From the NCBI GenBank assembly GCA_051294905.1, contig CM119378.1:9672001-9736000 (forward strand): DNA of 64,000 nucleotides, written 5' to 3'. The stretch's first letter is position 1; every line of letters starts with the position of its first letter. A program made the position numbers and the translations under genes. Positions 10-47,800 of this stretch are shown one piece after another. Origin of the DNA: Botryllus schlosseri (Eukaryota). The notes under the pieces were generated by a model. That model was not told where the DNA came from. It did no database searches and was given only the letters and a program-made list of their open reading frames with translations.

Positions 10-3958
<3,949 letters not shown>

Positions 3959-4968
3959 AATGCTTGATTATCAAATCCACCAATTCCCAAAGAAATATAC
4001 AACCGTAACCTGCTGAATAAACCCAGGAATATAGTTCTCAAGGTAAACCACACTTGGTATGTCAATAAAAGCACATTACTCTCAACGGGCTAACAACGCG
4101 CTGCCCTCCTGAATTATACACTGAGACACGCACAGTCACTGCAGGTATGCGTGCATTATGATTCTACCTTGACGTACTCCAGGCTATATTCCGGCACTTA
4201 TCGACCCCCTACTTTAGCAGCGGCGTTGATGGCACATATTCGTCGGGTTATCAGTAAATATCACACTACCCAGAACACATTACCCGTGATCATAATCGGA
4301 GCACGGCAAAGGTTTAGATACCGCGTCGACACTTATCACGATTTTCTTTATCTATTACAGCAAATGGAATTCATCAACAGAACGACATAATGGCAATCAT
4401 GGTTTATTTTGTTTTGTACTCAGTGATCCATGACATTGCAATTTAGGATATTGTTCTTCTGCACGTCTCCGTGACCGTGAGCTTATAAGCATTACGAATA
4501 TAGTCCGAGATTTACTTGCTCATTTACATAGAATTGCGCATATCCCGGTTAGATGTCCAGGAAAATTCAACGATTTTGTCACCTCGGAATCAGAAGCGCA
4601 TAGAAAACACCCGCGCCCTTGTCGTTGAACTACCATGTGATAAGCATGAATTAGGCTACATGAAAACACGTCGGTCGATCAAGTATGCCCGAACACAACT
4701 GTAGGACAGTATTTCGAAGGCTATCCGACAATCGTCGAGCATGTTCAGTGTCTACATTCCAGTCGAAATATAAGCAGTTTCTGTCGAATCAATACTTGAC
4801 AAGAAGCCAACCCTGGATATTGCAGGACCGCGATTAGAAATTGACTTCACCTACCGACACGTCACATTCGTTTGGACTAATTGTTATTGGATGTAATCTT
4901 TTACTTTTCATTGAGTGCGCGCAGTACATACCCCATGCTTTCTAAAGCAAGGTGGGAGTCTGATTAAG

Positions 4969-41800: not shown

Positions 41801-44800
41801 AGTTTCTCCGGTCGTGCCCCATTTTCGAATGTTCATGCTGTAATTGCTGCCTCCCAAAATCCCGCAGAGAACCTCGACCATCATAGCTAACCCGTAACCT
41901 GATAAAAACAATTAACACTATTTCCACGCGCAACAAAAAGCCACTCAACCAATCACCTTTGTACCCCGAAGTCTCCTCGGAACCGCCCAGAGGCAACATA
42001 CCACCACCGTCCAGGACAGCTTGTGGGTCGTTCGTCACCTTGCCTTCCTTGTCGGCACCCCAACCGTCAGGAATGGGAATTCCTTTTCTAAAATGATTTT
42101 GTTCGCATGATAAAGTATAATTTGGAATGAGTCGCATATCTGACATGTAGCTATGACTAATTATGGAACGAAACTGATCACTTCTGACCAGGCCTCCGTG
42201 CCCGGCTGAGGATGTGGCAGGTAGTGGCTAATCCCGTAGAAGTAGCAACAGAAGGAACACAGAAAAATTCTAGTGAATTGGAAGTAGAAGTAGCAATTTT
42301 CAAGACATACCGAAACTGCAGGTGCACCGAAGTAATTGCAAAATGCAGATTTCGTCAATGGGTCGAATACTTTTAGCAGTTGATCGGGGGGTGGTTACTT
42401 TAGAAATCGTAGGGTTATCTTTGTGACATATGCAGAATCACTAATGACTAGGGCGATTTTTTTGGAAATGTAAAAATTTTGTCAGAATTGAAGCGTTAGG
42501 TCGAAAAATTGTCGAAATTGTTTACAAAGTCTGAAGTTTTTTGACTCGTGCATTTTATTTGTACCGCAGATTTTGCACTGTCGGTGAACTTATCATTTGA
42601 TATTTTACAGCTTGTAGCCTACTTTATAGGCGTACCGTTGTAGACGGCCCAGTGTCTGCTCAGTGTGAATCATAAATGGTCAAATGAAACCAAATAGATT
42701 GACGCGGTGTTAATGGTCAACGTACCGCAATATCCTAACTGAAGAAAGACTGCTTGGGCATTGCATGGTTCTTATATCAAGAAGCGCATGATGAAAAATT
42801 GTGATGTAGACAGCATTGTCAGAATGAAGCAACAAGGTGTGTCACCAGCAGTGTACGTACAACTTCAGTGTTGCCGGTCAACAACTACTACGGCTGCTGA
42901 ACGTTCTTCCTCCATTCTTGGCAAGCTACTAAGTAAGGACAGACACTTTCTACCCGAGAATGTAGGAAAGTATCTTTCGTTGTAATACAACAAACTTTAA
43001 TTATTTCTACCATAATACGCGAATACCGGAATTCTTCATAGGGACAGATTTCGATAAAATAAAGTTTTTTCGCGTAAAAATTTGTCAGTTTTCAAGTCAA
43101 AAACGTTTTTTCAGACCAAATACTTCGGACAGTTCTAACAAGGACAAGGACAGACAGTTCCAAACAGAAATGAAGATAAGTAGCACAATTTTAATACCCA
43201 ATTTGCATAGGTGAGGTCAAATTAATTTAAAATTTTGATTTTTCAGGTCAAAATCTTCTGTTTTTAGGTCAAAAAAATCGCCCGACTAATGACACTACAA
43301 ATTAGGTGCAATTTACAAAAATTCATCCAGTTAACGTTACCGTCATACAGATTCTATTTCGGTGAGTGGTGACCATAATATAATTCGAAACATGCTTTCT
43401 ACTTTGCAAACTTCAACGAGTAGAAAGTAAGTGGTTTTATCAAGAAAAAGTTGAAGAAGTCCAAGACACAACCTTGTGAGGAAGTACGGTAGTAGGCAAA
43501 ACCTAATTGAGTACTCATAATAAGTAAAAGTACTTTGTTACTAACAACCTCTGAAAACTTCATACGCTAATATTAATTAGGGAGTTGAAAAGAATTCCAA
43601 AATAACAACTACCCATAAAACATGCGATGAGCAGTGAGCACACACTAAACAATGAATTACATAGAATGTCAATGAGATGAAAAATACAACCCATGCCACC
43701 ATTTCATTCCAGTAAAGTACAGTTCATTACGGTGCCAATATTTTAATTGCTCAGATGCAGCAGCCAAGTGTGTATTTGCCTAGCAGCTATGTAGCATTTT
43801 CGATAGAAATTAATTAACCGTGCCATGATCATGACCATAGAAAGCGACGGCAGGTTCGAACCTTGCATTAACTTCAGCTTTCCCAAAAGAGACGGCACTT
43901 GTTGCCATGTCCAGTACAAATGTATCACCATCAACACCAGGGGCAGCACATGCAATTGGGTTCGTACCAAGTCCATAGAACGAAGACCGATTTACCCGTA
44001 CTATGCGACTTGAATTGGTGAAAGAGAAACCCTGAATGTTATTGAGATCATCTCACCTTCCGGAATGATCTCAGAATAAATAAAGCGTGGCAGGACAAGG
44101 CATCAAGCATGAATTCCATAATGCTGGCATAACCGGACGATGATCAGATGGCGTAACGTCTCATATAGGCCTATTCACTGTTGTTGTGACACCACATCAG
44201 TAGATTGAAAGATGATGAATGATGGGAAGAAGATGAGTCTGATGACACCAGTTGAAATATTATGTGAAATCTACTCTACTTGATGATCGTAAGGTCAATT
44301 GCGCAGATGCGTGCAGCATCATCGGCATATATTATTCAAAGAGGAGTTTCTTGTTCAAAATGCGGAATACTGCTGTTGGGGTTCGATAGAGCGGTTACGT
44401 GTACCATGTCAGGATTTTGATTTTTAGATCCAATTCCCAACTACTGATAAATCATGGCACGTCAACGAATTTGAACGAACATGAGATAGACGAGTTTTTG
44501 TGATGCAATTTGGGATAAAGATTTTGGCTTCACAAAAGCAATTCAATAGGACATTGAAATAGAGTTTGGGAATTCTAAATCACAGTTGAATGAAAACATG
44601 AAAATTGAACAAAAATATTTGTCATTAGAAAAACTACCAGAATCTGTTACCCAACTAATCCTTACGAAAGATTTGTAGCTGGATAAACATCGCTAACAAG
44701 ACGTCAACGCAATTTGAAGTGAAACCGTGCAGCTGGTTGCTGTGATCATTATCGAACCAAATACATACGCGACAGTTACTTCTACTGATCTGCTATTTCA

Positions 44801-47800
44801 AACAGCAGCGCGATTCAAATCATCAATTGAGAGCCACAAATCAGCACTTGCTAGTCCCTATGCCGGTACAAGGTTCACCGCAACAACAGGAAGAAATAGG
44901 AAATTAGCAGAGTCGGCTACTCAGAGGTGACATACCGCATAGCTCGCATTGTAGTTCATCAGATGACAATGGCAATATGATATGAGCTGGCGGCGTTAAA
45001 GATGAAAAAAGAGAAACATCTGCCACCAAGCAACGATATTTGTTAATTACAGCAAATTTCACCATGAGAAATGCGCATTTCAGAGATATACCAGTCGGCA
45101 TCATCAGATGTTATCTTTCGTAAATTATTTTTATACAATTTCTGCACGATTCATACAAGACCAGGCTAGATCATACCTAGTGAGATAGGCTTTATCAATA
45201 CAAGTTCATATCTAGGCGGGTTCACCACAAACAGCCGGGACTTGATTTAGTAAAAAATCGCCGGAGTCCGGCAATGTCGGAAGATGCAGGTACGCGCTAT
45301 TGTTAAGCATCTTCCCGGTTAGCACCAGAAGTCAACCTTTCATTGATCCGAACTTTGCCGATAGAGACGGTACTGGTCGCCATATCGAGAACAAAGGAAT
45401 CGGCACCTACGGCCGGAGCAGCGAATCCGATAGGATTCGTACCAATCGCGAGCTCCGCAGAACGAGGGGTGAATACCGCAGGAGAAGTGTCGGTAAACGA
45501 CATCCCCTGAAGAAAATTTTGCGATCACACCCTACAAACTATATCTGGTGCCGAGATATCACAATCTTTGTTATACCACTCTGCATCGATGAGTGAAATC
45601 TCAAATCTCGGAATATCTGTCGAGGTTGAAACGTAAAAACTAGCGAAACATTGTCCACATTTGGCACCATCACCATTACCATTACGATACACTGCTTTTT
45701 GAGCAATAGACTTTGCTTCAAAACTGTGGGCCTTACAAATCAATAATTATAGAAATTCAGGAAGTGCTGTTACTAACCATTTAACCATGACTGTAACATT
45801 TTGTACAGACCAGACTCCCATTTAATTTTTTTAAAGCCGAGTAGTGTTAAGGTTGTCTGTAGCAGTAATAAAATTTATCCTCATCGGTTAGTTGAAGTGG
45901 CAAATAGATGGATTGTAATTTCAAGATAGGAAATTGAGAATTCAATGGTAAGTCTTGAATTGCATCGACTTTAGTCTAATTTCAAGTATAACACTAGAAA
46001 TCTAATGGTGAGATTCATTTCACAAACTAAGTCTACAAACTAGGTATGAACTTAAGTTATTTTCCACGTGGGCCAGGATTACCGGTAGATAGATACCACA
46101 TCAAACTTTTACCTATAACTCCATACTACCAATGTTTCAATGTACGCTGGCGTAAGCTTTCAATGACAATAGTTCTAGTGATGAATCTTTATTCAAAAAT
46201 TAAAATATGATGACCTAGTGCTCCAACAAAGTGCATAGATTAAGCTGTAATTTGATTGGCTTGAAAATAAGAGTCAAGGAAAGGTACATTACTAACAAAC
46301 CACAGCACATCACTGCAATCATAAATTTGCGAGTATTACAAACCAATCAAACGAAGGGAATTAACCAAGGCAATATTCGTGTAAGGATGAAGCAGTCACT
46401 ATGGTGAGCGTGCAGTGCATGACTGACCTCTTGTTTAGTTCTATCTTTCCCAAAGCAACGGTAGTTGTCGCCATATCAAGTACGAAGCTGTCATTATTTT
46501 TCGCAGGCGCAGAGAACGAAATCGGATTAGTTCCAAGCGTACACTCTTTAGAACGAGTCGGCAAGACAAGGGGAGACGTGTTGGTAACGCTCATGCCCTG
46601 AGATGAACAAAATTTGAATACAAGTGAAACGGTGCTTAATCAAATCAACAGGAAAAATTCTTTCAGATAATACTTCCTTCCCAAAAGGTAGTTCAACGAG
46701 TTGCTAAAAAATACAGGATTGATTGCTTAACATGAAATTATCGTCTGCAAGAATTAATCCTTCATAAAAGCCTTTGGACTGTGACATTGCTTCACACTAC
46801 CGTCGCTTTACAATTGCCAGAAGGCAGATCTAGTTATAATCTGGTGATTCAGAGCATACCTTTTGCCTTAATGCCATGATAAGTCTTAATACTTTGTTGT
46901 ACAAAATCCTACTTGATATTCACAAAAACAGGTTTGACAGACGTCTTCTAGACACCAAGCACAAATTATTTTTAGGTGGGGCCCGTCATAAGCAAAACGT
47001 CATATAAAATTTCCTACCTTAGAGAGTATGTGTCGCAAACACCAAGAGTATTTAGTATACCGTTGAAACAAACCTGTGTCACTGTATATATCCAAATTCA
47101 AGTAAGCCCTACTAAACAACCTCATTCTGTAAGGAATATATCATTTTCCGTCTGTATAAAACAAATTGATAAATCAACTTCCTTATTTTAGCAAGCAGAT
47201 ATCCAAGAACTAGTCTCATCACATCTCCATATTTGATGAAGAGTATAGCGAGCTCGAGCATACAGATTAAATTAATAGGTCCACAGAAGACATACCAATG
47301 TACATTCTGTCTGGGGTTAAATAGTTTCAATCTTGGTGATAACAGACATGGAATCCTTTGTAAAATACATGAACGTTTAAATTGATGGCGATGGCTCCAG
47401 CGGTGACCTAGTTGTGATTCAGAGGACAATTTCAGCAGCAGCACTAACATCATGTATCTTCTACTATGAAAAATTTTGACAATTGGTTTCAGAAACAGTT
47501 GAGAACTTACCACTAAGCCTTGACTGGAGGCCTGTAATGCATAGTAGCCAGCGATCCCATAGTGATTGGATCCTTTGGCAACGACCCATCCAACTCCACT
47601 TTCTTTGGCTTTCTGAAGTCAACAAGACAAACTTATGTTACGTCTTCTCCATACAGACCAACTGAATGAAAATATCCTAATAGCAAGGACACAGACAATA
47701 CCTTGATAGCAAGGTCCATGCAAAATTTACCGACTACAGGACCCAGACCATTGCGACCGTCAACATGAGCGGTAGCGGCGGATTCTTTTAAAATTGCAGG

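What the first reader, a model, noticed from the sequence alone, without database searches (positions are those of the whole stretch)
43841..46810. Candidate Dscam-style docking site with competing selector sequences around the exon-5 cluster
Seen: the intron upstream of 5a holds pre-mRNA UAAAGCGACGGUAGUGUGAAGCAAUGUC (46783-46810). It is complementary to three sites. (i) 45832-45857, about 325 nt before the 5b acceptor (about 20 of 28 positions, cores UAAAGC, GUAGUGU, AAG, UGUC). (ii) 44081-44093, 50 nt before the 5c acceptor (7+5 bp with a small internal loop, extendable by G.U pairs). (iii) 43841-43853, right after the 5c donor (13 bp with one G.U). All three compete for the same bases. Established: competing docking/selector pairing governs the Drosophila Dscam1 exon 6 cluster. 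Inference: unpaired gives 5a, pairing (i) loops out 5a and gives 5b, pairing (ii) gives 5c. Caveat: short matches do arise by chance; the core 11-mer CGTCGCTTTAC also occurs at 2441-2451.
Basis: partly seen in the sequence, partly recalled or inferred. Interest (0 to 1): 0.75.

Follow-up and report, generated by a model that had tools for sequence, protein, structure and literature searches.

The report
Possible RNA stem bracketing alternative exons
An enzyme gene uses one of three alternative copies of an exon. The proposed insect-style RNA "docking site" does not work as described, but one of its three pairings recurs in a distant relative and may be a real RNA stem closing the exon cluster.

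Summary
The sequences and pairings are at the stated coordinates. RNA reads confirm that exons 5a, 5b and 5c (170 nt each) of this minus-strand Ldh_2-family gene are used one at a time, with 5a dominant.

The Dscam exon-6-style reading is not supported. Selectors (i) and (ii) are no better than chance; (ii) is only the fourth-best site in its intron, and neither has a counterpart in relatives. Exon 5a has no selector. The 170-nt exon length means double inclusion or skipping gives early stops, which already explains exclusivity.

Two things about the docking segment (D, core 46797-46810) do stand out:
- **Match to exon 5a.** D reads as an inverted copy of the conserved [12 protein letters not shown] coding segment.
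- **Site (iii) recurs in a relative.** This site lies at +9 to +21 after the 5c donor. A distant relative with 5a-like and 5c-like exons has a matching helix at +11 to +24. Twelve pairs stay in register, four through changes on both sides. No shuffled (0 of 300) or real (0 of 250) control matched it.

Best reading (about 50%): D and site (iii) form a stem that closes the cluster and tunes the exon ratio. All chance: about 38%.

The parts
47511..47612 (-). Constitutive exon 4 ([34 protein letters not shown]); donor GTAAGT begins at 47510
   Evidence: Translation and splice sites. RNA joints run from 47510 to 46596 and from 47510 to 44030.
46772..46823 (-). Its reverse complement resembles the exon-5 coding segment [12 protein letters not shown].
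   Evidence: Inverted blastn match to exon 5a nt 111-146: 29 of 38, E = 0.018. Smith-Waterman p = 0.003 for 5a and 0.008 for 5c. Single copy in the genome.
46428..46597 (-). Variable exon 5a, 170 nt, the dominant form. Segment 46451-46465 (up to 46438-46495) is complementary to D.
   Evidence: Joints 4-5a (34 reads) and 5a-6 (57 reads). D x 5a: -21.6 ungapped over 15 bp; -29.1 for the 28-mer, reached by 1 of 24,000 controls; -45.7 by RNAduplex. This helix closes both the minimum-energy and centroid folds.
45832..45857 (-).
   Evidence: -21.1 by RNAduplex, p = 0.16. Per-window control frequency 1.6-3.8%. No counterpart in the relative.
45337..45506 (-). Variable exon 5b, 170 nt, minor form
   Evidence: Joint 5b-6, 17 reads. 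Translation. Absent from relative L009.
44081..44093 (-).
   Evidence: -14.6 by RNAduplex. Fourth-best site for D in its intron. No counterpart in L009.
43862..44031 (-). Variable exon 5c, 170 nt, minor form, weak donor GTTCGA
   Evidence: Joint 4-5c, 12 reads. Translation. Has a 5c-like counterpart in L009.
43829..43855 (-). It is the partner of D in the proposed cluster-closing stem.
   Evidence: 13 bp, -21.0 ungapped; -28.6 by RNAduplex with flanks. Reciprocal-best partner of D among intronic sites. Zone-limited p = 0.019. L009 has a counterpart at +11 to +24.
41957..42087 (-). Constitutive exon 6 ([15 protein letters not shown]...)
   Evidence: Joints from 42087 to 46428 and to 45337.

Best explanation
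**The gene.** It is a minus-strand Ldh_2-family (malate/L-lactate dehydrogenase type 2, 'YjmC-like') gene. It has three tandem 170-nt copies of exon 5, and transcripts carry exactly one of them.

**Exclusivity (shown from sequence).** 170 is not a multiple of 3. Including two copies, or none, shifts the frame into early stop codons. I infer that such transcripts are removed by nonsense-mediated decay.

**The docking site.** It is not the hub of a Dscam exon-6-type system. Its matches to sites (i) and (ii) are chance.

**What may be real (inferred from two species).** Element D (46797-46810, 200 nt before exon 5a) may form a long-range helix with element S (43841-43853, which abuts the 5c donor at +9 to +21). 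That stem would close the whole variable-exon cluster into a loop of about 2.95 kb.

**Likely effect (by analogy).** The comparisons are the R2-R5 module of human ATE1 and the approximating or balancer pairings of fly clusters. Like them, the stem most likely tunes the 5a:5b:5c ratio and does not enforce exclusivity. It could do so in two ways:
- by shortening the effective distances between the cluster and its flanking constitutive exons;
- by occluding the sequence next to the weak 5c donor.

**Competition in this species.** The same D bases also match the 3' part of exon 5a about equally well, so D-5a and D-S cannot form together.
For: **One exon at a time.** RNA joints are 4-5a (34 reads), 4-5c (12), 5a-6 (57) and 5b-6 (17). 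Depth is about 73, 10 and 9 for 5a, 5b and 5c.

**Frame rule.** Stops appear in every shifted frame.

**D-S helix in the window.** It is a 13-bp helix at -21.0. It is the best partner of the post-5c-donor zone in all 3.65 kb upstream. p = 0.019 against shuffled intron 4. Only 0.8% of real segments match it.

**Counterpart in L009.** This contig has the same exon boundaries and 5a-like plus 5c-like exons.
- Its reciprocal-best helix joins 3587-3600 (264 nt before the 5a-like acceptor) to 4641-4654 (+11 to +24).
- Twelve pairs are in register with the window's helix: 6 unchanged, 2 changed on one side, 4 changed on both sides, none broken.
- In the test for helices at matching positions, the observed score was -36.4. 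It was reached by 0 of 300 in each of three shuffle nulls and by 0 of 250 real pseudo-introns.

**RNA-level signature.** The L009 helix has 4 G.U pairs, so it exists only in the sense RNA.

**Not repeat-derived.** The motif occurs 3 times in the genome against 4 for the control pattern.
Against: - Only one relative carries both arms, and the zones and tolerances of the position test were chosen after I saw the match.
- The L009 helix alone is unremarkable in energy (p = 0.14).
- D's primary sequence is no more conserved than average intron-4 windows (rank 147 of 439).
- The closest relative, L005 (exon 5a 89% identical in protein), shows no D-like element and no complement to its exon in the 245 nt available upstream of 5a.
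- A stem enclosing all three exons has no established role in the docking/selector literature, and the direction of its effect is a guess.
- No structure probing or mutation data exist.
Confidence: 0.5

Rival explanations
1. Nothing here is a functional RNA structure. All of D's complementarities are chance, or neutral leftovers of a small inverted copy of exon sequence. Exon choice is set by splice-site strength, order of transcription and protein factors. Exclusivity comes from the frame rule plus nonsense-mediated decay.
For:
- No other intron-intron pairing stands out.
- D is not conserved in primary sequence and is absent from the 245 nt upstream of 5a in L005.
- The D-exon 5a match is only moderately significant (blastn E = 0.018; about 0.04-0.2 windows expected) and is absent in L009.
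- The acceptor pyrimidine tracts weaken from 5a to 5c, in line with usage.
Against: The reciprocal-best D-S helix at matching positions in L009 keeps 12 of 12 pairs and has 4 changes on both sides. No control reached it: 0 of 300 in each of three shuffle nulls, and 0 of 250 real segments.
Confidence: 0.38
2. An unpaired dock gives 5a. Dock paired with selector (i) loops out 5a and gives 5b. Dock paired with selector (ii) gives 5c.
For: The pairings exist and overlap on the same dock bases. Selectors (i) and (ii) lie upstream of 5b and 5c, as that model requires.
Against: - (i): p = 0.16.
- (ii): -14.6 kcal/mol against a chance best of about -21, and fourth-best in its own intron.
- No counterpart of (ii) before the 5c-like exon of L009.
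- The strongest intronic partner, (iii), is on the wrong side of the cluster for this model.
- The dock's best partner overall is an exon.
Confidence: 0.05
3. D acts mainly through its match to the exons. A hairpin between D and the 3' part of exon 5a encloses the 5a acceptor in a loop of about 285-330 nt and masks part of the exon. This damps use of the proximal exon so that 5b and 5c get a share. Weaker pairing to the same segment of 5c and 5b competes. The closest parallel is the repression of chicken beta-tropomyosin exon 6B by an intron-exon structure (from my own knowledge, not checked here).
For: - D x 5a: -29.1 for the 28-mer, reached by 1 of 24,000 controls.
- -45.7 over about 58 nt.
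- This helix closes both the minimum-energy and centroid folds of the 403-nt stretch.
- Smith-Waterman p = 0.003.
- D x 5c is -22.7 and D x 5b is -17.1.
Against: - 5a is still the dominant form.
- No such complement exists in L005 or L009, so the feature is specific to this lineage.
- It could be a neutral inverted exon fragment.
- The z-score of the whole fold is only -1.5.
Confidence: 0.2

Closest known systems
Drosophila Dscam1 exon 6 docking site / selector system (Graveley 2005; reviewed in PMC6071210, PMC4691838)
   Same: An intronic element upstream of a tandem exon cluster can pair with several downstream sites through the same bases, so only one pairing forms at a time.
   Different: - No selector lies before each variable exon.
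- The two upstream-of-exon matches are chance-level.
- The supported partner lies after the last variable exon.
- The docking sequence is not the most conserved element of the cluster.
- Exclusivity is already explained by exon length.
Human ATE1 exons 7a/7b: R2-R5 ultra-long-range pairing module (PMC7797038)
   Same: A long-range intronic helix in a chordate mutually exclusive exon cluster. In ATE1 this module sets the isoform ratio and does not enforce exclusivity, which is the role I propose for D-S.
   Different: The ATE1 module spans 30 kb and is proven by mutagenesis and antisense oligonucleotides. Here the span is about 3 kb, the 3' arm abuts a donor site, and the evidence is purely comparative and computational, from two species.
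Bidirectional docking/selector pairings of srp and Dscam exons 4 and 9, and Dscam1 'balancer' pairings (PMC4691838, PMC8791459)
   Same: Long-range pairings bring distant splice sites closer and offset the advantage of the proximal exon. Compensatory evolution occurs with little primary-sequence conservation.
   Different: In those systems the chosen exon lies outside the loop, next to the stem. Here all variable exons lie inside the loop.
Frame-enforced mutually exclusive exons cleared by nonsense-mediated decay (summarised in PMC6071210)
   Same: Exon length is not a multiple of 3. Double inclusion and skipping both give premature stops.
   Different: Decay of the aberrant forms was not tested here.

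Membership tests
Dscam1 exon-6-type docking/selector system | One docking site in the intron before the cluster, conserved across species | tested here: inconclusive
   Primary sequence is not conserved above background and is absent from the 245 nt available in L005. Position and pairing to S are kept in L009.
Dscam1 exon-6-type docking/selector system | A selector upstream of every variable exon, complementary to the docking site beyond chance | tested here: not met
   None for 5a. Site (i) has p = 0.16. Site (ii) is weaker than the chance best and fourth in its intron. L009 has no counterpart.
Dscam1 exon-6-type docking/selector system | Selectors overlap on the same docking bases, so pairings exclude each other | tested here: met
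   All partners use 46796-46810. This follows from how they were found.
Dscam1 exon-6-type docking/selector system | Disrupting and restoring a pairing changes and restores exon choice | not testable with these tools
   Needs minigenes or genome editing.
Long-range intronic RNA pairing that tunes exon ratio (ATE1 R2-R5 type) | Complementary arms in introns flanking the cluster, stronger than chance | tested here: met
   D-S helix of 13 bp at -21.0, reciprocal best. Zone-limited p = 0.019; 0.8% of real segments match it. The zone was chosen after the fact.
Long-range intronic RNA pairing that tunes exon ratio (ATE1 R2-R5 type) | Helix kept in other species through compensatory changes | tested here: met
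   One relative only (L009): 12 of 12 pairs kept, 4 changed on both sides. No control reached it, 0 of 300 and 0 of 250.
Long-range intronic RNA pairing that tunes exon ratio (ATE1 R2-R5 type) | Breaking the helix shifts the isoform ratio without creating double-exon forms | not testable with these tools
   Experimental.
Frame-enforced mutually exclusive exons | Exon length not divisible by 3; double inclusion or skipping gives premature stops | tested here: met
   Each exon is 170 nt. Stops appear in the shifted frames of 5b, 5c and exon 6.
Frame-enforced mutually exclusive exons | Transcripts carry exactly one variant | tested here: met
   Joints 4-5a, 4-5c, 5a-6 and 5b-6 are seen. No joint between two variants is among those listed, and 20 weaker joints are not shown.

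The most novel reading that the evidence does not exclude
One intronic arm, D, works as a two-state RNA switch. Paired locally with the coding sequence of the proximal exon 5a, it masks that exon. Paired 3 kb away with the sequence abutting the donor of the distal exon 5c, it frees 5a and closes the whole cluster. The 'selectors' would then be an exon and a donor flank, not sites upstream of exons. The D-S arm would date from before the split from the L009 lineage. This would be a docking design not described for fly or vertebrate clusters, in a tunicate metabolic enzyme gene.
Probability: 0.15. Interest if true: 0.7.

Novelty: new member of a known kind. Interest (0 to 1): 0.5.

Why it matters
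RNA-structure control of mutually exclusive exons is well documented in insects and in a few vertebrate genes. Whether it is general is an open question. The Ivanov-Pervouchine duplication model (PMC6071210) also awaits more cases.

If real, this would be a conserved, covarying stem that brackets a three-exon cluster in a tunicate-type genome. That would be a lineage between the studied ones, in an enzyme gene. It is small enough (3 kb) for a simple minigene test.

The negative part matters too. Short multi-site complementarities of the kind flagged here arise by chance at this intron size. Duplex energy alone cannot establish a docking site. Comparison of helix positions between species could.

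Tried and rejected
- **RNAduplex on long sequences.** On whole introns, or intron against exon, energies grow with length and random sequence does as well. I replaced it with windowed compact-duplex and ungapped-helix measures. A first windowed RNAduplex scan timed out, as did one shuffle run.
- **Repeat or transposon origin of the motif.** Rejected. D is single copy and the 14-mer is not enriched in the genome.
- **Paralogous cluster in the same genome.** None found.
- **Known RNA family in 42000-47700.** None at E <= 1.
- **Search for relatives.**
  - A full-length proxy (P0012) proved to be from an insect, and its relatives were useless here.
  - The open reading frame around exon 5c gave no homologues.
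  - Loci L006-L008 and L010-L015 have a single exon 5 and/or a different gene structure, so they could not test the pairings.
- **Phylogenetic footprinting of intron 4** against L005 and L009. D is not conserved in primary sequence.
- **A D-like motif I saw by eye in L005 and L009.** It scores at the background level, so I do not count it as evidence.
- **Pseudo-exon relics around site (i).** The tblastn fragments there are not colinear, so rejected.
Full report
**1. The locus**

The gene lies on the minus strand. Its exon translations, and every homologue found, carry Pfam PF02615 (Ldh_2), named 'uncharacterized oxidoreductase YjmC-like' or 'malate dehydrogenase' in animals.
- Exon 4 is 47612..47511.
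- Exons 5a (46597..46428), 5b (45506..45337) and 5c (44031..43862) follow. Each is 170 nt, flanked by AG and GT, and they are 53-61% identical to each other in protein.
- Exon 6 starts at 42087.
- The gene and the three exon copies are unique in the 495-Mb genome.
- Other notes of this scan call the genome tunicate. I did not verify that.

**2. Exon use**

I laid raw RNA-seq reads of one run and contigs of three others on 42000-47700.
- Joints: exon 4 to 5a (34 reads), exon 4 to 5c (12), 5a to exon 6 (57), 5b to exon 6 (17).
- Depth is about 73, 10 and 9 for 5a, 5b and 5c.
- No joint between two variants is among those listed, though 20 weaker joints are not shown.

Because 170 is not a multiple of 3, two variants in a row, or none, run into stops within a few codons. 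This frame rule, with nonsense-mediated decay (inferred), is enough to explain exclusivity in mature mRNA.

**3.

RNAduplex gives -21.1 for (i), -14.6 for (ii) and -23.8 to -25.1 for (iii).

Against 400 dinucleotide shuffles of each target intron, the docking 28-mer's best energies have p = 0.16, 0.31 and 0.06. In the 5b-5c intron the best site is not (ii). RNAduplex allows 30-nt loops and drifts with length, so I wrote a compact-duplex measure with loops of 3 nt or less. It reproduces the three sites at -20.1, -16.3 and -22.7.

With that measure:
- The dock is the top window of intron 4 for the sum over the three introns.
- But 0.5-1% of 2,400 real and 1,200 shuffled control 28-mers reach that sum, so 4-9 of 886 windows are expected.
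- A second hub at 47383-47414 scores alike.

No intron-intron pairing in the cluster stands out. A general scan lists 16 other inverted pairs of 14-24 nt. The motif is not a repeat family. As found, the triple match is therefore what chance gives.

**4. What the docking segment matches best**

The strongest partner of D is exon 5a itself.
- blastn finds an inverted match of 46772-46809 to exon 5a nt 111-146: 29 of 38, E = 0.018. This is the best non-exon hit in the region.
- The reverse complement of D reads D-I-A-S / T-T-V-A-L, against DMATTTVAL in the exon.
- A Smith-Waterman test against 1,000 shuffles gives p = 0.003 for 5a and 0.008 for 5c at the same place.
- As a duplex, D x 5a is -29.1 for the 28-mer, reached by 1 of 24,000 controls. 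That means about 0.04 windows expected in intron 4 and about 0.2 over all cluster introns.
- It is -45.7 over about 58 nt, and it closes both the minimum-energy and centroid folds of the 403-nt stretch.
- D x 5c is -22.7 and D x 5b is -17.1.

This feature is moderately significant. It is absent in both relatives, so it is lineage-specific. It could be a neutral inverted exon fragment.

**5. Relatives**

Two contigs are informative.
- **L005** (ENA metagenome assembly) holds an exon 5a that is 89% identical in protein, with 245 nt upstream of the exon. It has no D-like motif and no complement to its exon or downstream intron.
- **L009** (Logan contig) has the same exon boundaries and two exon-5 copies, orthologous by identity to 5a and 5c. 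Its introns do not align to the window's.

In L009:
- The best partner of the 60 nt after the 5c-like donor, in all 1.64 kb upstream, is 3587-3600. That is 264 nt before the 5a-like acceptor, against 200 nt in the window.
- The best partner of that segment downstream is 4641-4654, at +11 to +24. In the window, D pairs with +9 to +21.
- Aligned in register, 12 pairs hold in both species: 6 unchanged, 2 changed on one side, 4 changed on both sides.

I then ran a test for helices at matching positions. It covers three zones: after the 5a donor, before the 5c acceptor and after the 5c donor. Tolerances are 2.5 nt on the target and 100 nt on the intron-4 arm.
- It picks exactly this pair, with a score of -36.4.
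- None of 300 shuffles of either intron 4, or of both, reaches it.
- None of 250 real 876-nt segments gives a matched helix.

Caveats:
- The zones and tolerances were set after I saw the match.
- Only one relative is available.
- The L009 helix alone has p = 0.14.
- D is not conserved in primary sequence.

Sites (i) and (ii) have no counterpart in L009.

**6. Reading**

I put about 50% on D-S being a real stem that closes the cluster. Its 3' arm abuts the weak 5c donor. In this species, D's match to exon 5a competes for the same bases.

By analogy with the ATE1 R2-R5 module (PMC7797038) and the approximating or balancer pairings in flies (PMC4691838, PMC8791459), it should tune the exon ratio and not enforce exclusivity. 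The direction of the effect is a guess.

**7. Novelty**

If real, this is a new member of a known kind, long-range RNA pairing in a mutually exclusive exon cluster. It would be in a new lineage and gene, with an unusual geometry.

Noticed in passing
L009:3829-3857 and L009:4316-4347: The relative's cluster has a much stronger candidate stem: -28.2 kcal/mol, about 26 bp, reached by 0 of 3,000 controls. It joins the 30 nt just before the 5a-like acceptor to the middle of the next intron, so it would loop out the whole 5a-like exon. The window has nothing comparable at that place (energies -10 to -15).
   Followed up: partly
L009:3865-4034 and L009:4461-4630: The relative has only two exon-5 copies, 5a-like and 5c-like. 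The 5a/5c duplication therefore predates the split of the two lineages, and 5b was either gained in the window's lineage or lost in the other.
   Followed up: partly
window 42573-43336: This stretch of the intron after 5c has contig depth in the thousands in three runs, with many internal joints and loose ends. It looks like a high-copy, transcribed repeat or transposon fragment.
   Followed up: no
window 45018-45045: A short direct exon-5a-like fragment (about 77% over 22-26 nt, blastn E = 0.13) lies in the 5b-5c intron. It also complements D weakly (-12.8). It may be chance or a relic.
   Followed up: no
This shows how easily such hubs arise.
   Followed up: partly
window 44600-46460: Contigs from two other runs cover the introns with 3-5% differences and several small insertions or deletions (20, 6, 6 and 3 nt). 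They probably come from a divergent haplotype or population, and could serve for a variant test of D and S.
   Followed up: no
window 44445-44472 and 43807-43837: A segment of the 5b-5c intron pairs with the sequence just after S: -25.1 for the 28-mer, with a 12-bp core at -18.9. It is the second-best partner of the zone after the 5c donor, and about 1% of controls do as well.
   Followed up: no
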